Source: Octopus sinensis (lineage: Eukaryota). From it: a stretch of 64,000 bases of DNA. Each line of letters opens with the position of its first letter. Position 1 is the stretch's first letter. Position numbers and translations under genes: made by a program. The stretch is taken from positions 1 to 64,000 of the forward strand of contig NW_021832389.1 of assembly GCF_006345805.1 (NCBI RefSeq), written 5' to 3'. This document shows positions 5,121-62,418 of the stretch, piece by piece. The notes beneath the pieces were generated by a model. It was not told where the DNA came from. It saw only the letters and a program-made list of their open reading frames with translations, and made no database searches.

Positions 5121-5720
5121 TAATTATTATTATTATTGATTTATTTATTTTTTTATTTTAATACATTTATTGCTTTCGGCTCAAGGAAATGACGGCATAA
5201 TTATTTCTACTCAATTATCTGAAACTACACAGCAACTCGTTTTCCGTTGGTCTTGCTGTTGTTATTGATGTTGTTGTTGTTCTTGTTGTTGTCACTGTCG
5301 TCGTCGTCGTCGTTTTTGTTGCGGGTATTGGTGGTGGTGGTGGGGGGGGTGAGGGTGGCGATGGTCGTTGTGTCGCTACAGGTGTACATAGTGTGTTTTA
5401 AGTCGATTTCCTACCGCCATATTGTCTCACCAACTTCAGTCAATCTTGATCAACAAAATTCACACTCATCAGTGTAACCATTCCAGGCGTGACCATCTCG
5501 TCTTTTCAGCTGTATCGATGAATATATTATTTAATCGATCTTGGCTTTCCTTGTTTAATATGTCACTCTGCTGTGTCATGTGATCTTTATTTGTGATTCA
5601 AATATGATTTGTCATGTCTGCCAAGCTGAATATCTCTGTACGAAGTCACTTGTTAGCAGCGTGAATACATTCACAACACTTAACTTCTCTTATGGTTACG
5701 AGAAACAGACAACGATACCT

Positions 5721-5936
5721 ATTTCTTTACTACCCACAAGGGGCTAAACACAGGGGTGGGGGGAACAAACAAGGACAGACAAACGGATTAAGTCTATTAC
5801 ATCGACCCCAGCGCGTAACTGGTACTTAATTTATCGACCCCGAAAGGATGAAAGGCAAAGTCGACCTCGGCGGAATTTAAACTCAGAAAGTAACCGCAGA
5901 CAAAATACCGCTACGCATTTCGTCCGGCATTTTGCC
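5721..5936 (-). mobile_element. Nin/Deu-domain SINE (tail 1), 5'-shortened, with 15-bp TSD
   Basis: Contains gcctttcatcctttcggggtcgataaattaagtaccag (Nin/Deu motif, on minus) and B box gagtttaaattcc; flanked by cagacaacgatacct at 5706 and 5937. Confidence 0.92.
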
Positions 5937-6039
5937 CAGACAACGATACCTTCGAACGCAAATATTGAACGGTGAGTGCTCGCGTGAATCTGGATTCGCA
6001 GACGTAACGTTCTTTCTAGAATGATAATCATCGCTATAC

Positions 6040-8852: not shown

Positions 8853-8934
8853 TTATACATGTATACATATATTCATACAGATATAGATATATTAATACAT
8901 CAATAAGTGATGATTATGATGATGAGGATCATTA

Positions 8935-9161
8935 CTTTACTACCCACAAGGGGCTAAATACAGACGGGACAAACATTCACAGACGGAGGGATCAAGTCGA
9001 TTATATCGACCCCAGTGCGTAACTGGTACTTATTTAATCGACCCTGAAAGGATGAAGGGCAAAGCCGACCTCGGCGGAATTTGAACTCAGAACGTAACGA
9101 CAGACGAAATACTGCTACGCATTTCGCCCGGCGTGCTAACGTTTCTGCCAGTTCGCCGCCT
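8935..9161 (-). mobile_element. Nin/Deu-domain SINE (tail 1), full length
   Basis: A-box head aggcggcgaactggcagaa, B box gagttcaaattcc, Nin motif, tail ...ccccttgtgggtagtaaag. Confidence 0.92.
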
Positions 9162-11237: not shown

Positions 11238-11910
11238 CTGGAGGATTACGTATGTTTGGAGATCCTTGTAATATCACAGAAACGCACACACGATTGTCGT
11301 ACATTGTCTCACGATAATCTTTCAGTCTTCCATATGAGTTACTCACAGTGTGCTTAACGCATTAAAGAATTTAATTCAATTATAATCATTTCTACAATTT
11401 GACAGTCTCATCGTATGTGTGAAATAATGCTGCGGCATTTTTGGACAGAACAATGACGATGCCATTAGTGTAGATATTTCTACTGAATTTATATTGTTGT
11501 TAGATTTACACATCGTCAGTTGTGTATGTATATTTTTTAAAATTTTGTTTATGACTACTATACGTTATATTTCTATTTATTTTGGTATTGTGCTCTGCTA
11601 TGAATATCGTGACATTCTGTCGAGTATAGATAGCTTGTCCATAAATGTTTTAGCTGCTATGCTGTTGAAATGTCTATTTTTAAAACTACCGTCGACTATA
11701 CTTATGAATTGCTTACTGAAGACTGTTACAATTTCATTTGGTTCGGACATAACAGCTTGATGAGTGGGCAAGCATGTTTTGTTTTTTGTATTGCATATAA
11801 TGTTAGTCGAGGTTATTCCAACGGTGTTACTTCCTGCTAAGTTGTTTTTTTTAATAGTGTTTCTACAACCATAAATTAGATTTTGGTTGTTTCTGCTTTA
11901 TCATATACCT

Positions 11911-12506
11911 ATTTCTTTATTACCCACAAGGGGCTAAACACAGAGCGGACAAACAAGGACATACATAGGTATTAAGTCGATTACATCGACCCCAGTGCGT
12001 AACTGGTACTTAATTTATCGACCCCGAAAGGATGAAAGGCAAAGTCGACCTCGGCGGAATTTGAACTCACAACGTAACGGCAGACGAAATACCTATTTCT
12101 TTACTACCCACAAGGGGCTAAACACAGAGGGGACAAACAAGGACAGACAAACGGATTAAGTAGATTACATCGACCCCAGTGCGTAACTGGTACTTAATTT
12201 ATCGACCCCGAAAGGATGAAAGGCAAAGTCGACCTCGGCGGAATTTGAACTCACAACGAACGGCAGAGAAATACCTATTTCTTTACTACCCACAAGGGGC
12301 TAAACACAGAGGGGACAAACAAGGACAGACAAACGGATTAAGTAGATTACATCGACCCCAGTGCGTAACTGGTACTTAATTTATCGACCCCGAAAGGATG
12401 AAAGGCAAAGTCGACCTCGGCGGAATTTGAACTCAGAACGTAAAGGCAGACAAAATACCGATAAGCATTTCGCCCGGCACGCTAACGTTTCTGCCAGCTC
12501 GCCGCC
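11911..12506 (-). mobile_element. Nin/Deu SINE head-to-tail trimer with a single TSD pair
   Basis: Three bodies, period 184/182 bp, one head at 12506; tttatcatatacc flanks both ends. Confidence 0.95.
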
Positions 12507-12578
12507 TTTATCATATACCGAGTAGGTGTTTAATGAACAAAATATTCATTATGTCTCAGACAAATTAGACTTTAACAT

Positions 12579-19077: not shown

Positions 19078-19404
19078 GTGAGGGCGCGTGGCTTAGTGGT
19101 TAGAGCATTCGGCTCATGATCGTAAGGTTGTGAGTTCGATTCCCGGCGACGCGTTGTGTCCTTGAGCAAGACATTTTATTTCACGTTGCTCCAGTCCACT
19201 CAGCTGGCAAAAATGAGTTGTACTTGCATTTCAAAGGGTCAGCCTTGTCACTCTCTGTGTCACGCTGATTATCCCCGAGAACTACGTTAAGGGTACACGT
19301 GTCTGTGGAATGCTCAGCCATTTGCACGTTAATTTCACGAGCAAGCTGTTCCGTTGATCGTATCAGCTGGGACCCTCGTCGTCGTAACCGGCGGAGTCTT
19401 TTTT
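19078..19404 (+). mobile_element. tRNA-head (H1) + CORE-type SINE, tail T1, poly(T) end, 15-bp TSD
   Basis: gcgtggcttagtgg A box, gagttcgattccc B box, gtgtccttgagcaagaca CORE-like motif; ttagaaacaaagaca at 19063 and 19403. Confidence 0.95.
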
Positions 19405-21690: not shown

Positions 21691-22607
21691 ACCTAAATGT
21701 AATACATTTGTGACAATGAGTTTGAAATCCAACGAAATTAAGCAAACGTTCGACCAGAAAGCAATACCACGTTTTGGTTGGAAAGCGGTGGGAAACCATT
21801 CTGTGGTATTATGTGCGTTGTTCGTTCGTTCGTTCGTTCTTCTTCTTCCATTAATAAAAGTTATTTGTCAAACGTAGAAGAGTGTCATTTTTGCGGTTGA
21901 ATCAATATTACAAAAGTTGTTATATTCTGGTGTAGCGATGGGAATATAGATATTAGAAAACTTGAGGGAAACTGTCAAAAACGTGAGCTGGACTTAGTGA
22001 CTTGTACATTAAGCATGAACTTTTCCACAGACAAGTATCTATTTTGGCTCGATACGGTGAAGTCAGAGAGAAATATTTTCGTGTTGTTTAAATTCTTTGT
22101 GATTAGACTGATTTACATCAACGGAGAGATATGAGTTCCAATTTATCGATTTCTTGGCTAGGAACAAAGTCGCCGAATATGTAGAAGAGAAGTAAGGTTA
22201 CGTAGTTCTTTGACACTTGTATATATCTCATGATCATTTGGTGTTGTTAATTCAAATTCAGAGAGACAGTATCGATACCTAGCAATGGCACGCAATTCTG
22301 AATTGTAGAATGTGATGTATGTAACTCGATTGAACGGCCAATTAGTGCATGTGTTGTCTTTGTATTTTACCGATTTAACGAAAATCGAACATAAAATTGA
22401 TATGGTTATTCGAACGTAAAATCTTACAAAAGAATCGATTGACTTTGTTCAAGTATCTCTTTCATAGATGCTTCACCAAAATTGGCATAAAAAGAAACTT
22501 CTGATAATGGACATCGTTAATATTCGAAATCAGGACGTAGGTCTTAGAACTTATTGAACAGAACCAAAAGCAGTTTTTAACACTTCATTTACCAATATTG
22601 AATTAAA

Positions 22608-23280
22608 CCGAAGGCGGTGACCTGGTAGAATCGTTCGTATGCCGGTTAAACTGCTTAGTGGCATTCCATCCGTCTTCACATTCTGAGTTCAAATTCCATC
22701 GAAGTCGACTTTGCCTTTCATCCTTTCGGGGTCGATAAAATAAGTACCAATTGAGCGCTAGGGTTGATGTAATCGATTTAATCCCTTACTTGAAATTCCT
22801 GGCCTCGTGCTAAAATTTGAAATTAATTTTGAATTAACTGAAGACGGCTAGCTAGCAGAATCTTCAGCACGCCGGACAAACTGCTTAGCGGCATTCCATC
22901 CGTCTTCACATTCTGAGTTCAAATTCCATCAAGGTCGACTTTGCCTTTCATCCTTTCGGGGTCGATAAAATAAGTATCAGTTGAGCGCTAGGGTTGATGT
23001 AATCAATTTAATCCCTTACTTGAAATTGCTGGCCTCGTGCTAAAATTTGAAATTAATATTGAATTAACTGAAGACGGCTAGCTAGCAGAATCTTTAGCAC
23101 GCCGGACAAAATGCTTAGCGACATTTTCTCCGTTCTGAGTTCAAATTACGCTGAGGTCGAGTTTGCCGTTCCTTCTTTCGGGAGTCGATATAAATACCAG
23201 TTGAAAAGTGGGGTCGACGTAATGCACTTGCTACTAACCGCAAAAATTACTGGTCTTGTGTCCAGACTTGAAACCAATAT
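22608..23280 (+). mobile_element. Tandem trimer of older Nin/Deu SINE (tail 2), ~230-bp period
   Basis: Three heads (22608, 22838, 23068), each with B box and Nin motif; tail ggcctcgtgctaaaatttgaaa. Confidence 0.9.
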
Positions 23281-23529
23281 CGAAAGAATTGAATGAAATC
23301 TCACATAGGTACTTGAAATCAAGCACGAAAAGAAGAAAATTAAATTGATGCTTCAAGGCGTTTTATCTCGTATTTCTGTTTAATATCGTTCCTCATCATT
23401 TCTTTATCCGGATTTCTGAATTTTGATTTCAAATCCTGCCGGGTCAGTTGTGCAGTTTAACATTTCAGGATTCATATAAACAATACATTAATCCAGAGCG
23501 TTAGATTAAGTAAACTACTTTGCGTGTCA

Positions 23530-23760
23530 GGCGGCGAGCTGGCAGAAACGTTAGCACGTCGGGCAAAATGCGTAGCGGTATTTCGCCTACCGTTACGTTG
23601 TGAGTTCAAATTCCGCCGAGGTTGACTTTGCCTTTCATCCTTTCGGGGTTGATTAAATAAGTACCAGTTACGCACTGGGGTCGATATAATTGACTTAGTC
23701 CGTTTGTCTGTCCTTGTTTGTCCACTCTGTGTTTAGCCCCTTGTGGGTAGTAAAAAAATA
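23530..23760 (+). mobile_element. Nin/Deu SINE (tail 1), full length, 15-bp TSD
   Basis: tactttgcgtgtcag at 23516 and 23761. Confidence 0.95.
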
Positions 23761-36228: not shown

Positions 36229-36510
36229 GCCCTTACCTGTATACGTACCTGTTTGTTTAAATATGTATACATGTGGCGGTGTGGTAAGAAGCGTGCTTCC
36301 CAACAACATGGCTCCACGTTCAGTCTTTCTGCGTGGCCCCTTATTTCTTTATTGCCCACAAGGGGATAGCTATAGAAGGGACAACAGGGACAGACAGAGA
36401 AGAGCACAAGGGTACAAATTATACAGGTTCGATGTCGCACTAATTGTGGGTATATATATATATATATATTATATATATATATGTGTAAAATATATATGTA
36501 TATATATATG

Positions 36511-36603: not shown

Positions 36604-36781
36604 ACATATCTGTTTGTTTAAATATGTATACATGTGGCGATGTGGTAAGAAGCGTGCTTCCCAACAACATGGCTCCACGTTCAGTCCCTCTGCGTGGCCC
36701 CTTATTTCTTTATTGCCCACAAGGGGATAGCTATAGAAGGGACAACAAACAGGGACAGACAGAGAAGTGCACAAGGGTACA
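36159..36781. repeat. Tandem duplication of a composite unit (family C head fragment fused to antisense Nin-SINE tail)
   Basis: atacaggttcgatgtcgcactaattgtggg at 36160 and 36421; both units end cttatttctttattgcccacaaggggatag...gcacaagggtacaa. Confidence 0.9.
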
Positions 36782-39890: not shown

Positions 39891-40019
39891 ATCAAATAGG
39901 ACAACAATGAACATGGTAAGAATGAGTAACTTACGCGAAAAAGTTTGCGTGAGTATTGGTGTTGTGCTTTGGTACTTTAGTTAAACGTCCCCATAAGACG
40001 GAAAGGTGAAGTTAACCTA

Positions 40020-40617
40020 TTTCTTTACTACCCACAAGGGGCTAAACACAGAAGGGACCAACAAGGACAGACAAACGGATTAAGTCGATCATATCGACCC
40101 CAGTGCGTAACTGGTACTTATTTAATCCACTCCGAAAGGATGAAAGGCAAAGTCGACTTCGGCGGAATTTGAACTCAGAACGTAGCAGCAGACGAAATAC
40201 TTATTTCTTTACTACCCACAAGGGACTAAACACAGAGAGGACCAACAAGGACAGACAAACGGATTAAGTCGATCATATCAACCCCAGTGCGTAACTGGTA
40301 CTTATTTAATCCATCCCGAAAGGATGAAAGGCAAAGTCGACTTCGGCGGAATTTGAACTCAGAACGTAGCAGCAGACGAAATACTTATTTCTTTACTACC
40401 CACAAGGGACTAAACACAGAGAGGACCAACAAGGACAGACAAACGGATTAAGTGGATCATATCGACCCCAGTGCGTAACTGGTACTTATTTAATCCATCC
40501 CGAAAGGATGAAAGGCAAAGTCGACTTCGGCGGAATTTGAACTCAGAAGGTAGCGGCAGACGAAATGCCGCTAAACATTTCGCCCGGCGTGCTAACGATT
40601 CTACCAGCTCGCCGCCC
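40020..40617 (-). mobile_element. Nin/Deu SINE head-to-tail trimer with a single 12-bp TSD pair
   Basis: Three bodies, 184-bp period, one head; tgaagttaacct at about 40007 and 40618. Confidence 0.95.
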
Positions 40618-40784
40618 TTGAAGTTAACCTTGTTGCCATTTGCACCCAGAATATAAAGGTACTGATTATCAGAAGGCATTTTCTACTCCCCTCTTACTGT
40701 TGTGCACATGTATATGTAATAGTGATGCTAATAATGATAGTATCTCGCATGATGACAATGTATGAGTGTTCAGTTATTGCAGAA

Positions 40785-49810: not shown

Positions 49811-50005
49811 GAAGATACTTGATGCCAAATATTGTCCATTTTCAAGAGAATTCGTTATTTGTTACCTTGGAAATATTCTTTGAAAAGTCAGGTGTCAGTT
49901 TAACTGGAAACCAGCAAAGTGAATTTGAAATGGAAGCATACACGATTATCTCACCTTTAGCATCACTCCTTCATATCCAGCCTATGAAGGATTCAGTAAA
50001 TACCC

Positions 50006-50235
50006 ATTTCTTTATTACCCACAAGGGGCTAAACATAGAAGGGACAAACAAGGACAGACATAGGTATTAAGTCGATTACATCGACCCCAGTGCGTAACTG
50101 GTACTTAATTTATCGACCCCGAAAGGATGAAAGGTAAAGTCGACCTCGGCGGAATTTGAACTCACAACGTAACGGCAGACGAAATACCGATAAGCATTTC
50201 GCCCGGCGTGCTAAAGATTCTGCCAGCTCGCCTCC
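50006..50235 (-). mobile_element. Nin/Deu SINE (tail 1, acataggtattaag variant), 8-bp TSD
   Basis: taaatacc at 49997 and 50236. Confidence 0.93.
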
Positions 50236-50258
50236 TAAATACCACACACACACACACC

Positions 50259-54644: not shown

Positions 54645-54846
54645 AAATATGGTGCAAAGAGACTATTCGATTACATCGACCCTCTCAACTGGAATTTAAT
54701 TTATCGACAAAGAAAGGGTGAAAGGCATATAAGGCCTGAACATAATTCGAACTTAGCGAAAGGCGAAAGGCGAAATACCGCTAAGCATTTCGTCCAGCGT
54801 GCTAACGATTCTGCCAGTTCGCCAGCTTAATTAATTAATAATGATG

Positions 54847-54878
<32 letters not shown>

Positions 54879-55087
54879 TGTAATAATGATCCTTTGTGCA
54901 ATAAGTACAAGACCTAGATTTTTCTGTGGCAGGGAGACAATCTATAACATCGACCCAGTACTCAATTTGTACTTGACTTATAAACCCCGAAAGTCGACCT
55001 CGGCGAAATTTGAACACAGAACGTAGCGGCAGGCGAAATACCGCTAAACATTTCGCCCGGCGTGCTAAGGACTCTGCCAGCTCGCCG

Positions 55088-55090
<3 letters not shown>
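54645..55090 (-). mobile_element. Two tandem diverged Nin/Deu SINEs
   Basis: Heads at about 54826 and 55090, each preceded by Nin-motif remnants. Confidence 0.85.
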
Positions 55091-56030: not shown

Positions 56031-56681
56031 TCCGTCATCCATCGGTATCTACAGCAGCGTTTTGTTAAAAAGGAGAACCTACACCTCTGGTCGCTGGTTA
56101 GCGATTTCAGATGCAGATTCAGATAGTACAGGAGTATATGATATCGACAAATGACCACTACACATTAAAATTGTTGAGTTTGTGCCTCAATTAGAAACTA
56201 TTATAAGGGTGGTGATTTCGCAGAGTCGTTAAAGTATCAAAAAGAAATTCTTTGTGTCAATTTTTGTGATATATTATCTTCTGATTTCAAATTCTGCCGA
56301 AGTTTAATTTACGTTTTATCTGTCCGGGACGATAAAACAACGTACCAGTGAAGTGCTCCAGCCTGTTGGATCTGCCAGTGCCCACTCTAATAGGAAGCGA
56401 GCAGGCAGAATCGTTAGCACGGCGGACAAATAACTGCCTGGTCACGTCATTGAATGTGCAGAAAATATGCTGTGTTCTATTTCGTTGGAGATCAGTTATT
56501 GTAACTGTTTAGCCAGAAATTATCTTTCATCGTATGGCTTTATGGGTAATGATGTCCCAGCCGTCATGATTCCGTCTACAGTTTTTATTTGTACATGGGA
56601 ACCCTTGAACAAGTCATCCATCGTGTAACTTTCTAAGCCCGTTTCGTGTGTTCTGAGGAAAGTCCTGCTGCTTTATATATG

Positions 56682-56910
56682 TTTCTTTATTACCCACAAG
56701 GGGCTAAACATAGAAGGGACAAACAAGGACAGACATAGGTATTAAGTCGATTACATCGACCCCAGTTCGTAACTGGTACTTAATTTATCGGCCTCGAAAG
56801 GATGAAAGGTAAAGTCGACCTCGGCGGAATTTGAACCCAGAATATAACGGCAGACGAAATACGGCTACGCATTTCGTCCGGCGTACTAACGTTTCTGCCA
56901 GCTCGCCGCC
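56682..56910 (-). mobile_element. Nin/Deu SINE (tail 1, acataggtattaag variant)
   Basis: Full head to tail; ctttatata on both sides. Confidence 0.93.
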
Positions 56911-60039: not shown

Positions 60040-60453
60040 TATTGGTTTCAAATTTTGGCATAAGACCAGCAGTTTCTGAGAAGAGGTTAAGTCTATTAAA
60101 TAGAGCCCAGCACTCCACCGGTTCATATTTTATTGAACCCGAAGGGACGAAAGGCAAAGTCGATACGGTGGAATTTGAACTCAGGACCTAAAGACAGACG
60201 AAATACTGCTGAACAGTTTATCTTGTGTGCTGACGATTCCTTTTCTACTCTAGGCACAAGACCCAAAATTTTGGGGGAGGGATGCAGTCGATTAGATCGA
60301 CCTCAGTACGCAACTGGTACTTAATTTATCGACCCCGAAAGGATGAAAAGCAAAGTCGACCTCGGTGAAATTTGAACTCAGAACGTAAAGACAGACGAAA
60401 TACCACTAAGCATTTCGCCCGGCGTGCTGACGATTCCGCCAGCGTGCCGCCTT
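60040..60453 (-). mobile_element. Two tandem Nin/Deu SINEs (tail 2)
   Basis: ttttggcataagaccagc...ggaatttgaactcagg and ggcacaagacccaaaatttt...gccgcc. Confidence 0.85.
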
Positions 60454-62133: not shown

Positions 62134-62364
62134 AGGCGGCGAGATGGCAGAAGCGTTAGCGCGCTGGGCGAAACGCTTAGCGGTATTTCGTCTGTCGTTA
62201 CGTTCTGAGTTCAAATTCCGCCGAGGTCGACTTTGCCTTTCATCCTTTCGGGGTCGATAAATTAAGTACCAGTTACGCACTGGGGTTGATGTAATCAACT
62301 TAATCCCTTTGTCTGTCCTTGTTTGTCCCCTCTCTGTTTAGCCCCTTGTGGGCAGTAAAGAAAT
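62134..62364 (+). mobile_element. Nin/Deu SINE (tail 1), full length, in a TA-rich site
   Basis: aggcggcgagatggcagaa...gagttcaaattcc...gcagtaaagaaata. Confidence 0.95.
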
Positions 62365-62418
62365 ATATATATATATCATATACACTTTATACATGCACAT
62401 ATATATGTGTCTGTGTAT

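What the first reader, a model, noticed from the sequence alone, without database searches (positions are those of the whole stretch)
11898..12519. Nin-SINE trimer built from two subfamilies: the SINE appears to insert into itself at a fixed site
Seen: one head plus three bodies inside a single TSD pair. In element orientation each 3' end (...AAAGAAATA) is joined to GGTATTTC, the internal site that normally reads gcGGTATTTCgtc. The outermost body (11911-12090) carries the variant tttattaccc / acataggtattaag, while the two inner bodies carry tttactaccc / acaaacggattaag. The head has ccgataagc, the same state as the solo acataggtattaag-type copy at 50006. Inference: head plus outer body are one original copy, and bodies of another subfamily were inserted into it in exact register with a seamless 5' junction. 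Simple slippage of one copy would not give mixed subfamilies. This would be a self-targeting, array-building SINE.
Basis: partly seen in the sequence, partly recalled or inferred. Interest (0 to 1): 0.75.

Follow-up and report, generated by a model that had tools for sequence, protein, structure and literature searches.

The report
SINE head with three tandem bodies
A short retrotransposon copy carries one head and three tandem bodies; a second such trimer lies in the same window with the same join, and in both the middle body is a recombinant of its neighbours, so ordinary unequal exchange made the third unit while the origin of the first join stays open.

Summary
On the minus strand, 11910-12506 holds one 47-nt head and three bodies of 184, 182 and 184 bp inside one TSD pair (GGTATATGATAAAG). 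Each body's complete 3' end (AAAGAAATA) abuts GGTATTTC. The outer body matches two solo copies at four diagnostic sites; the inner two do not.

New facts change the reading.
1. A second trimer at 40018-40616 has its own TSD and the same junction position. Its three units are sisters.
2. In both trimers the middle unit is the 5' part of the last unit plus the 3' part of the first. That is the signature of in-register unequal exchange turning a dimer into a trimer, not of two separate insertions.
3. Three of eight copies have TSDs starting GGTAT and a fourth starts GGTTA (chance about 1e-8). The family's integration preference therefore matches its own internal site.

Best reading (0.45): a new copy integrated at the GGTAT site of a resident copy and was resolved in register, then homologous expansion followed. 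Template switching, a dimeric master and in-situ duplication remain open. No genome-wide data could be reached. SINE multimers of this general architecture are already published. Interest is moderate.

The parts
12506..12519 (-). 5' target-site duplication of trimer T1 (GGTATATGATAAAG in element orientation; last G shared with the head)
   Evidence: Exact 14-bp repeat of 11896-11909
12460..12506 (-). Single head of T1 (GGCGGCGAGCTGGCAGAAACGTTAGCGTGCCGGGCGAAATGCTTATC). It carries the 5' arm and loop of a predicted 13-bp hairpin.
   Evidence: fold. No tRNA called by ARAGORN or Rfam.
12276..12459 (-). Unit u1 (head-proximal body, 184 bp, CCGTTTG/GTAGTAAAG type). It starts GGTATTTT, where a CpG C-to-T change created a TTTT run.
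12094..12275 (-). Unit u2 (middle body, 182 bp). It is a mosaic: columns 8, 16 and 24 follow u3, and columns 25-184 are identical to u1. It has two private 1-bp deletions.
   Evidence: permutation p 0.007 for a single switch point
11910..12093 (-). Unit u3 (outermost body, 184 bp, ACCTATG/GTAATAAAG type). Its nearest relative is the solo copy at 50005-50235.
11896..11909 (-). 3' target-site duplication of T1
12086..12102 (-). Junction u2|u3: AAAGAAATA|GGTATTTC. It forms an imperfect palindrome, GAAATA-GG-TATTTC.
12268..12284 (-). Junction u1|u2: AAAGAAATA|GGTATTTC
40007..40629 (-). Second trimer T2: TSD GGTTAACTTCA (40007-40017 and 40619-40629), head 40570-40616, units 40386-40569, 40202-40385 and 40018-40201. 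Junctions read AAAGAAATA|AGTATTTC.
50005..50235 (-). Solo copy of the u3 type. Its TSD GGTATTTA (49997-50004 and 50236-50243) matches 7 nt of the internal site.
5720..5936 (-). 5'-truncated solo copy of the u1 type, with TSD GGTATCGTTGTCTG (5706-5719 and 5937-5950)
56680..56910 (-). Solo copy of the u3 type, TSD TATATAAAG
62135..62365 (+). Solo copy (nearest non-array relative of u1), inserted in a TA-rich target
23530..23760 (+). Solo copy (GATTAAATAAG type, as in T2), TSD TACTTTGCGTGTCAG
8930..9160 (-). Solo copy whose internal site reads AGTATTTC, the same state as at the T2 junctions

Best explanation
The array was built in two steps.

Step 1 (inferred). The family's LINE-driven integration prefers targets that begin GGTAT. 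The element carries such a site itself: GGTATTTC, at the loop/3'-arm boundary of a hairpin in its head. A new copy was target-primed at that site of a resident copy, so its complete 3' end (AAAGAAATA) was joined to GGTATTTC. The resident and incoming sequences are homologous. The 5' end of the new cDNA therefore annealed to the resident copy in register, and its own head was lost. The usual 8-15 bp target duplication is invisible because it is element sequence. The product is head-body-body inside the resident copy's TSD, and it can combine two subfamilies.

Step 2 (shown by the mosaic pattern). The dimer misaligned by one unit with itself, on a sister chromatid, a homologue or by replication slippage. 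Exchange within the unit gave head-X-(Y5'/X3')-Y, the trimer now seen.

The same two steps happened independently at 40018-40616.
For: Junction fixed and tied to the element's true 3' end:
- Six solo copies end at AAAGAAAT(A/G) followed by their TSD.
- All four internal junctions in two independently inserted arrays join that end to column 1 of the unit, with no flank bases included.

Independence of the two arrays:
- They have different TSDs and flanks.
- T2 units share five private states plus the GATTAAATAAG-type states of solos 23530 and 8930.
- T1 units group with other solos.
- No column separates first units from last units across the two arrays.

Target preference:
- TSDs start GGTATATG, GGTATTTA, GGTATCGT and GGTTAACT in 4 of 8 loci.
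- Background GGTAT frequency outside SINEs is 6.4e-4 per position.
- P(at least 3 of 8 start GGTAT) is about 1.4e-8; P(at least 4 of 8 start GGT) is about 5e-7.
- SINE-internal sites make up roughly half of the 21 GGTATTT sites in the window (my estimate from the totals and the site list).

Mixed origin in phase with the unit:
- u3 is 6 differences from solo 50005, against 10-11 from its array mates.
- The head shares GCTTATC with that solo.
- The u1-type segment runs from somewhere between the head and column 24 to somewhere between column 180 and column 24 of the next unit. That is about one unit, in phase.

Step 2:
- In T1 the informative-site pattern is yyyxxxxxxx (permutation p 0.007), with 0 differences from u1 over columns 25-184.
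- In T2 the pattern is yyyyxxyxxx (p 0.03), in the same orientation.
- The related array at 22598-23290 shows the same pattern.
- The switch points lie beyond column 21-24, further in than the 8-15 bp TSDs of this family. This argues against a second insertion.

A heterodimer of related families at 60040-60453 also sits in one TSD pair. An identical 14-nt segment (GGAATCGTCAGCAC) occurs in the first unit's head and at the start of the second unit. This fits a 14-bp TSD resolved in register.

Established knowledge (from memory, not retrieved): L1 5' ends are often attached by microhomology, and L1 cDNA can resolve on a resident L1 to give chimeric elements (Zingler 2005; Gilbert 2002; Symer 2002).
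Against: - Only two independent junction-forming events are available, and no genome-wide census could be made.
- T2 units are sisters. Step 1 there needs an incoming copy of the same rare sub-lineage as the resident copy.
- In T2 the presumed hidden TSD (columns 1-14) differs at two sites between the first and last units.
- Both arrays have outer TSDs that start GGT. Self-insertion does not predict this; in-situ microhomology duplication does.
- The link between head and outer unit rests on one or two sites. The head also shares TTAGCG with a copy of the other type.
- No LINE partner or endonuclease specificity is known.
- No full-length SINE-in-SINE insertion at this site (head retained) is present as an intermediate class.
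Confidence: 0.45

Rival explanations
1. Template switching during reverse transcription. The reverse transcriptase copies one SINE RNA from its 3' end up to the GGUAUUUC site. It then jumps to the 3' end of a second SINE RNA, or back to the 3' end of the same RNA, and continues to that RNA's head. The chimeric cDNA integrates once, giving one TSD pair. Later unequal exchange adds the third unit.
For: - A single TSD pair surrounds each array.
- Sister units in T2 are natural if the same RNA or the same source was reused.
- Column 1 of the unit is the first nucleotide of the 3' arm of a predicted 13-bp hairpin (positions 31-43 pair with 48-60, loop UAGC).
- The RNA 3' end GAAAUA is complementary to columns 3-8 (UAUUUC). 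This could hold an acceptor 3' end next to the jump point (read from the sequence).
- The heterodimer at 60040-60453 is a full first unit plus a second unit lacking about 13 nt, with a 6-nt overlap (GGAATC) between the first unit's tail and the second unit's head. This fits a microhomology-guided switch.
- Template jumping of LINE reverse transcriptases is established (from memory: Bibillo and Eickbush 2002).
Against: - It predicts that the head belongs with the first unit. In T1 the head shares GCTTATC with the solo that is sister to the last unit.
- It does not explain why external TSDs of the family begin GGTAT.
- The nascent cDNA end (GAAATACC) is not complementary to the canonical RNA 3' end, so no priming microhomology exists for this family.
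- No solo copies truncated at column 1 are present in the window.
Confidence: 0.2
2. Descent from a multimeric master. A dimer arose once, is transcribed through by RNA polymerase III, and retrotransposes as a unit, as the Alu dimer does. The fixed junction is shared by descent. Unit similarity within arrays reflects concerted evolution or recombination among masters.
For: - Two arrays have separate TSDs and the identical junction position.
- The consensus unit contains no TTTT run, so polymerase III could read through several units (sequence).
- Dimeric SINEs that amplify as dimers are well known (PMC10702118; PMC8466645).
Against: - No positional synapomorphy exists: first units of T1 and T2 share nothing to the exclusion of last units.
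- Each unit's nearest relatives are solo copies of three different subfamilies or its own array mates. This requires repeated homogenisation or repeated dimerisation anyway.
- Six of eight loci are monomers of the same subfamilies.
- The hybrid middle units were formed separately in each array.
Confidence: 0.15
3. In-situ tandem duplication. Copies that landed in GGT(AT) targets have a short direct repeat on both sides of the body: the internal GGTAT and the start of the TSD. Replication slippage or microhomology-mediated repair duplicated the body. The mixed subfamily content of T1 came later, by gene conversion from another copy. Further expansion was by unequal exchange.
For: - Both arrays have outer TSDs starting GGT (GGTAT in T1, GGTTA in T2), against 2 of 6 solos.
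- The window is dense in microsatellites and other tandem arrays.
- Published SINE arrays inside one TSD pair are attributed to duplication and unequal recombination (PMC11481361; PMC10702118).
Against: - T2 offers only 2-3 bp of microhomology, and its junctions read AAATA|AGTATTTC, not the AAATAGGT... expected. An extra mutation is needed.
- Hundreds of other 3-bp repeat pairs were available, so reuse of exactly the element's 3' end and column 1 in two loci is unlikely.
- T1 needs a conversion tract of 157-210 bp that happens to be in phase with one unit.
- Published in-situ arrays have units truncated at both head and tail. Here every tail is complete.
Confidence: 0.1

Closest known systems
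TSD1-(SINE)n-TSD1 tandem-like SINE arrays in the blood clam Scapharca broughtonii (Martelossi et al. 2024, PMC11481361)
   Same: One TSD pair. The first unit has a complete tRNA-related head, and following units are truncated at the same head position. Arrays of 2-3 units are the norm, and some arrays mix families.
   Different: There the inner units are also truncated in the 3' tail, so both breakpoints are internal, and the authors invoke unequal recombination. Here every unit keeps the complete 3' end, so the junction is element 3' end to internal site.
Head-to-tail SINE multimers in mammals (B2, Dip, Ves; PMC8466645) and tandem Alu insertions into A-tails
   Same: A SINE offers a preferred target for the next SINE, so direct arrays build up. 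The authors also leave open integration into a resident copy versus a dimeric template.
   Different: In those families the target is the A-rich tail, units are full-length with heads, and TSDs or A-tails separate them. Here the site is inside the head, units are headless, and junctions are seamless.
SINE-derived satellites (squamate sSats, PMC10702118; PcH-sat from a Nin-SINE in Patella, PMC11121367)
   Same: Tandem repeats of part of a SINE, with a longer terminal unit that reaches the SINE terminus. Unit length is about 180 bp. The model is an initial duplication followed by amplification through unequal exchange.
   Different: Those reach tens to thousands of units and many homogenised loci. 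Here there are three units per locus, still inside a recognisable insertion with its TSD.
Bov-A2 and Bov-tA of ruminants (from memory, not retrieved)
   Same: The body module is repeated behind or without a tRNA-related head. Higher multimers arise by unequal crossing-over.
   Different: Bov-A2 amplifies as a fixed dimer family. Here units of an array group with different monomer subfamilies.
Chimeric L1 elements and microhomology-mediated 5' attachment (Gilbert 2002, Symer 2002, Zingler 2005; from memory)
   Same: This is the proposed resolution step: the new cDNA anneals to homologous resident element DNA, giving a seamless chimera.
   Different: Those were described for L1 in cultured human cells and usually come with deletions. 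They are not known as a recurrent array-building route for a SINE.
Target-site triplication, TSD-(Alu-TSD)n (Lee et al. 2015, cited in PMC11481361)
   Same: It explains the neighbouring array at 22598-23290, where full-length units are separated by the same 15-16 bp spacer.
   Different: It does not apply to the finding itself, which has no spacer and no inner heads.

Membership tests
LINE-dependent SINE (non-autonomous non-LTR retroposon) | Dispersed copies flanked by target-site duplications of variable length and sequence | tested here: met
   Eight loci were examined. Seven have clear 8-15 bp TSDs of unrelated sequence; the TSD at 8930-9160 is unclear.
LINE-dependent SINE (non-autonomous non-LTR retroposon) | tRNA-related head with internal polymerase III boxes A and B | tested here: inconclusive
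   A box-B-like GAGTTCAAATTCC lies at unit columns 25-37, and a 5' GGCGG can pair with CCGCC. ARAGORN finds no tRNA, and Rfam at E<=10 finds no tRNA match in 11850-12560.
LINE-dependent SINE (non-autonomous non-LTR retroposon) | 3' tail shared with a partner LINE | not testable with these tools
   The window holds no ORF that looks like a real coding sequence, so no LINE ORF. A 55-nt homologue of the tail occurs at 36335-36365 and 36696-36726 inside another repeat, but its nature is unknown.
Nin-DC SINE superfamily (Piskurek and Jackson 2011) | Central body domain homologous to the Nin-DC consensus | not testable with these tools
   No reference Nin-DC sequence is held. The supplement of PMC4758252 is not available, and a literal sequence search of the paper library found nothing. 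The core GTCGATAAATTAAGTACCAG resembles my memory of Nin/Deu domains. That is a lead only.
TSD1-(SINE)n-TSD1 arrays (PMC11481361) | One TSD pair; first unit with complete head; inner units truncated at the same head position | tested here: met
TSD1-(SINE)n-TSD1 arrays (PMC11481361) | First and inner units truncated in the 3' tail | tested here: not met
   All units end at AAAGAAATA, the same end as the solo copies.
SINE amplifying as a fixed multimer (Alu-like dimeric SINE) | Units at the same position in different loci are each other's closest relatives | tested here: not met
   Units are closest to their array mates or to solo subfamilies. No column separates first from last units across T1 and T2. 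The sample is only two arrays.
SINE-derived satellite | Long, homogenised arrays at many loci | tested here: not met
   There are three units per array and two arrays in 64 kb. The genome-wide state is unknown.
Site-specific (self-targeting) retroposon | Non-random target sequence at the integration nick | tested here: met
   TSDs start GGTAT in 3 of 8 loci and GGT in 4 of 8. P is about 1e-8 and 5e-7 against the window background.
Site-specific (self-targeting) retroposon | Demonstrated integration events into resident copies (empty versus filled alleles, or inner units younger than outer ones) | not testable with these tools
   No population data, orthologous data or genome-wide data were reachable.

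The most novel reading that the evidence does not exclude
The integration machinery used by this SINE prefers GGTAT(TT) targets, and the SINE carries exactly that motif at a hairpin in its own head. New copies would then land in resident copies at a high rate. Homology would resolve them in register, seeding headless tandem bodies that unequal exchange then expands. This would be a retrotransposition-driven, site-specific route from an interspersed SINE to a satellite-like array.
Probability: 0.35. Interest if true: 0.6.

Novelty: new member of a known kind. Interest (0 to 1): 0.4.

Why it matters
How interspersed repeats turn into tandem repeats is usually explained by a rare, random first duplication followed by unequal exchange. 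If the first step here is a targeted integration into the element's own internal site, the seeding step would be frequent, site-specific and able to mix subfamilies. That would give a testable mechanism for the non-random genesis of SINE-derived satellites noted in squamates and molluscs.

There is also a practical consequence. Headless inner units and recombinant middle units will distort SINE copy counts, subfamily calls and age estimates in this genome.

As it stands, the robust result is modest: two trimers share one junction, and both were expanded by ordinary unequal exchange.

Tried and rejected
External copies could not be obtained.
- A metagenome scan with the 16-nt tail motif returned 120 loci, but none contains the element when BLASTed.
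- Viral contigs gave nothing.
- Bacterial and archaeal genome contigs gave nothing.
- Three protein-database searches gave no candidate: the antisense junction-spanning ORF, the sense frame-1 peptide and the sense frame-2 junction ORF. One further query was too short.
- Exact-protein look-ups of two window ORFs found nothing. The source organism was therefore not identified.
- A literal sequence search of the paper library found nothing.

Rejected readings:
- Assembly duplication artefact. Units differ at 5-11 sites in a structured way, and a second locus shows the same architecture.
- Simple divergence of duplicated units as the source of the u3 differences. Four sites coincide with states of two independent solo copies.
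- Two successive insertions as the origin of u1 and u2. They have 0 differences over 160 bp including a private state at column 116, and the switch point lies beyond the TSD length.
- Elevated change in the first ~24 columns of units as a sign of error-prone joining. The stretch holds three CpGs, and most changes are at CpG positions.
- An Rfam mir-955 match at 11903-11974 (15 bits, E 3.9). This is chance.
Full report
**What is at the coordinates**

The element lies on the minus strand. In its own orientation it reads as follows:
- 5' TSD GGTATATGATAAAG at 12506-12519
- a 47-nt head at 12460-12506
- unit u1 at 12276-12459 (184 bp)
- unit u2 at 12094-12275 (182 bp)
- unit u3 at 11910-12093 (184 bp)
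- the same 14-bp TSD at 11896-11909

Tandem Repeats Finder reports period 182, 3.0 copies and 96% matches. Both internal junctions read GTAGTAAAGAAATA|GGTATTTC. The head-proximal site reads GCTTATC|GGTATTTT. Coordinates shift by a few bases.

**The family in the window**

BLAST of the array against the window and a tail-motif scan (12 hits, 0 expected) find eight loci of this family.
- Six are monomers: 62135-62365 (+), 50005-50235 (-), 23530-23760 (+), 56680-56910 (-), 5720-5936 (-, 5'-truncated) and 8930-9160 (-).
- One is the array in question (T1).
- One is a second trimer (T2) at 40018-40616 (-) that the finding does not mention.

T2 has its own flanks and its own TSD (GGTTAACTTCA, at 40007-40017 and 40619-40629), so it is an independent insertion locus. 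Its junctions read AAAGAAATA|AGTATTTC. That is the same column of the element as in T1.

The solo copies end at AAAGAAAT(A/G) directly followed by their TSDs. The junctions in the arrays therefore use the element's true, complete 3' end. All four internal junctions in the window are at the same position. At most two of them are independent, as shown below.

**Subfamilies**

I aligned the six array units with the six solo bodies. Three types appear.
- The 'ACCTATG / GTAATAAAG' type comprises solos 50005 and 56680 and unit u3.
- The 'CCGTTTG / GTAGTAAAG' type comprises u1, u2, solo 5720 and, with one further change (CCCTTTG), solo 62135.
- A 'GATTAAATAAG' variant of the second type comprises solos 23530 and 8930 and all T2 units.

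u3 shares four states (columns 124, 126, 128 and 180) with two independent solos. It differs from solo 50005 at 6 sites, but from u1 and u2 at 10 and 11 sites. The mixed composition of T1 is therefore real and is not private divergence.

All T2 units share five private states. They are sisters.

**The middle units are recombinants**

In T1, u1 and u3 differ at ten columns. u2 follows u3 at the first three (columns 8, 16 and 24). This uses the parsimonious alignment, in which u2 is u3-like with a 1-bp deletion. u2 follows u1 at the last seven and is identical to u1 over columns 25-184, including u1's private T at column 116. The permutation p for such a single switch is 0.007.

In T2 the ten informative columns give yyyyxxyxxx in the same orientation (p 0.03).

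X, (5' of Y + 3' of X), Y is exactly the product of a one-unit misalignment of a dimer X-Y followed by exchange or slippage. A second retrotransposition would need two things. Its source would have to be identical to u1 down to private states. Its switch point would have to lie beyond column 21-24, whereas this family's TSDs are 8-15 bp.

A third array, of a related family with full-length units and a 15-16 bp spacer (22598-23290), shows the same pattern: head like the third unit, body like the first.

Each trimer is therefore a dimer expanded by ordinary homologous exchange.

**How the dimers arose**

Several facts bear on this.

(i) The same junction, complete 3' end to column 1, formed in two arrays whose units belong to different subfamilies. 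No column groups first units against last units across the arrays. A single ancestral dimer is therefore not the simplest reading.

(ii) The TSDs of this family begin GGTATATG (T1), GGTATTTA (50005), GGTATCGT (5720) and GGTTAACT (T2). The others begin TAT or TAC, and the one at 8930 is unclear. GGTAT occurs at 6.4e-4 per position outside SINEs. Three of eight therefore has P of about 1.4e-8, and four of eight starting GGT has P of about 5e-7. The GGTAT is present in both flank copies, so it was in the target. The family thus integrates preferentially where the top strand reads |GGTAT, which is how its own internal site reads (GCTTAGC|GGTATTTCGTC). By my count from the totals and the site list, SINE-internal sites make up roughly half of the 21 GGTATTT sites in the window.

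(iii) In T1, viewed as the dimer head-u1-u3, three things tie the head and u3 to solo 50005: GCTTATC in the head, G at column 24 of u3, and the four diagnostic sites. The u1-type segment begins between the head and column 24. It ends between column 180 and column 24 of the next unit. That is one unit, in phase.

(iv) A fold of the monomer consensus places column 1 at the first nucleotide of the 3' arm of a 13-bp hairpin (positions 31-43 pair with 48-60, loop UAGC). The overall fold is not exceptional (z = -1.0).

(v) The 3' end GAAAUA is complementary to columns 3-8. Each junction is therefore an imperfect palindrome, GAAATA-GG-TATTTC.

**Mechanism preferred (confidence 0.45)**

A new copy was target-primed at the internal GGTAT of a resident copy. 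The incoming cDNA is homologous to the DNA around the nick. The top-strand end can therefore anneal to it in register, which is microhomology-mediated 5' attachment taken to its limit. The incoming head is then lost and the TSD is hidden in element sequence. Unequal exchange follows.

This explains four things: the site, the direct orientation, the seamless register, and the possibility of mixed subfamilies.

The heterodimer at 60040-60453 fits the same scheme. It has one TSD pair, and an identical 14-nt GGAATCGTCAGCAC lies in the first unit's head (60424-60437) and at the start of the second unit (60227-60240). However, its junction is at a different position and involves a family with a different tail.

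Shown: the junction position, the TSD bias, the mixed origin and the recombinant middle units. Inferred: integration into a resident copy and its resolution.

**Rivals**

- Template switching of the reverse transcriptase at the hairpin (0.2) fits the sister units of T2 and the single TSD pair. It predicts that the head belongs with the first unit, and it leaves the GGTAT bias unexplained.
- A dimeric master (0.15) explains the shared junction trivially, but it lacks positional clades.
- In-situ duplication between the internal GGTAT and a GGT(AT)-initial TSD, plus later gene conversion (0.1), is favoured by both arrays having GGT-initial TSDs. However, T2 offers only 2-3 bp of microhomology and its junction reads AGT, not GGT. 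T1 would need a conversion tract in phase with one unit.
- The excess of changes in the first ~24 columns of units is adequately explained by three CpGs there.

**What is known**

The published record already covers much of this.
- Arrays inside one TSD pair, with a complete first head and head-truncated inner units, are described in a bivalve. There the tails are truncated as well (PMC11481361).
- Head-to-tail multimers make up 40-49% of B2 and Dip copies. Their origin, integration into a resident copy or a dimeric template, is explicitly left open (PMC8466645).
- SINE-derived satellites with about 180-bp units are known from squamates (PMC10702118).
- A satellite derived from a Nin-SINE is known from a limpet (PMC11121367).

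The finding is therefore a new member of a known kind. The distinctive points are the complete tails at every junction and the match between the junction site and the family's target preference.

The 'Nin' label could not be tested because no reference sequence is available. A tRNA origin of the head is not confirmed by ARAGORN or Rfam.

**Limits**

All attempts to obtain further copies failed. The metagenome scan was wasted on a pattern that was too short. The source organism is unknown. The window has no ORF that looks like a real coding sequence and is dense in microsatellites. All mechanistic weights rest on two arrays and six monomers.

Noticed in passing
window 40007-40629 (-): A second head-plus-three-bodies trimer of the same family. 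It has its own TSD (GGTTAACTTCA), the junctions read AAAGAAATA|AGTATTTC, and all three units are sisters.
   Followed up: yes
window 22598-23290 (+): Three full-length copies of a related SINE family (a different tail, ...AAAATTTGAAATTAAT). Each is preceded by the same 15-16 bp spacer, TTGAATTAAC(T)GAAG. The first and third copies are very different. The middle copy has the head of the third and the body of the first, which fits target-site reuse followed by unequal exchange.
   Followed up: partly
window 60040-60453 (-): A heterodimer of two different related SINE families inside one TSD pair (CCCATCT..TGAGA). The second unit lacks its first ~13 nt. An identical 14-nt GGAATCGTCAGCAC occurs in the first unit's head and at the start of the second. 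The first unit's tail (…AAAAGGAATC) overlaps the second unit's head by 6 nt.
   Followed up: partly
window 5706-5719, 11896-11909, 40007-40017, 49997-50004 and their partner copies: Target-site duplications of this SINE family begin with GGTAT (three loci) or GGTTA (one locus). This is a strong integration-site bias that matches the element's internal GGTATTTC.
   Followed up: yes
window 36335-36365 and 36696-36726 (-): The last ~55 nt of the SINE tail (…CCCCTTGTGGGCAATAAAGAAATA) occur inside another repeat. That repeat continues past the SINE end (…AGGGGCCACGCAGAGGGACTGAACGTGGAGCC…) and is present twice, 361 bp apart. It may be the source of the tail or a different element sharing it.
   Followed up: no
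window 19084-19400 (+): An unrelated SINE with a genuine tRNA-like head (Rfam tRNA, 29.5 bits, at 19084-19153). Its body contains CCTTGAGCAAGACATTTTATTTCAC, and it is flanked by the TSD TTAGAAACAAAGACA.
   Followed up: no
window 5924-5950 (-): The 5'-truncated solo copy starts with GGCAAAATGC immediately before CGGACGAAATGC. This looks like a short imperfect duplication at its 5' junction.
   Followed up: no
window 54669-55090 (-): Two diverged related SINE copies lie 267 bp apart, both embedded in an (ATT)n microsatellite.
   Followed up: no
window 12452-12459 and 5902-5909 (-): At the head-proximal internal site, a C-to-T change at a CpG turns GGTATTTCG into GGTATTTTG. This creates a TTTT run about 55 nt from the 5' end, which would terminate polymerase III early. 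These two copies are probably transcriptionally dead.
   Followed up: no
whole window: No ORF looks like a real coding sequence: all ORFs of at least 120 aa are translations of microsatellites or other low-complexity sequence. GC is 26-42%. The window is very rich in (TA)n, (CA)n, (ATT)n and similar repeats. The source organism could not be identified.
   Followed up: partly
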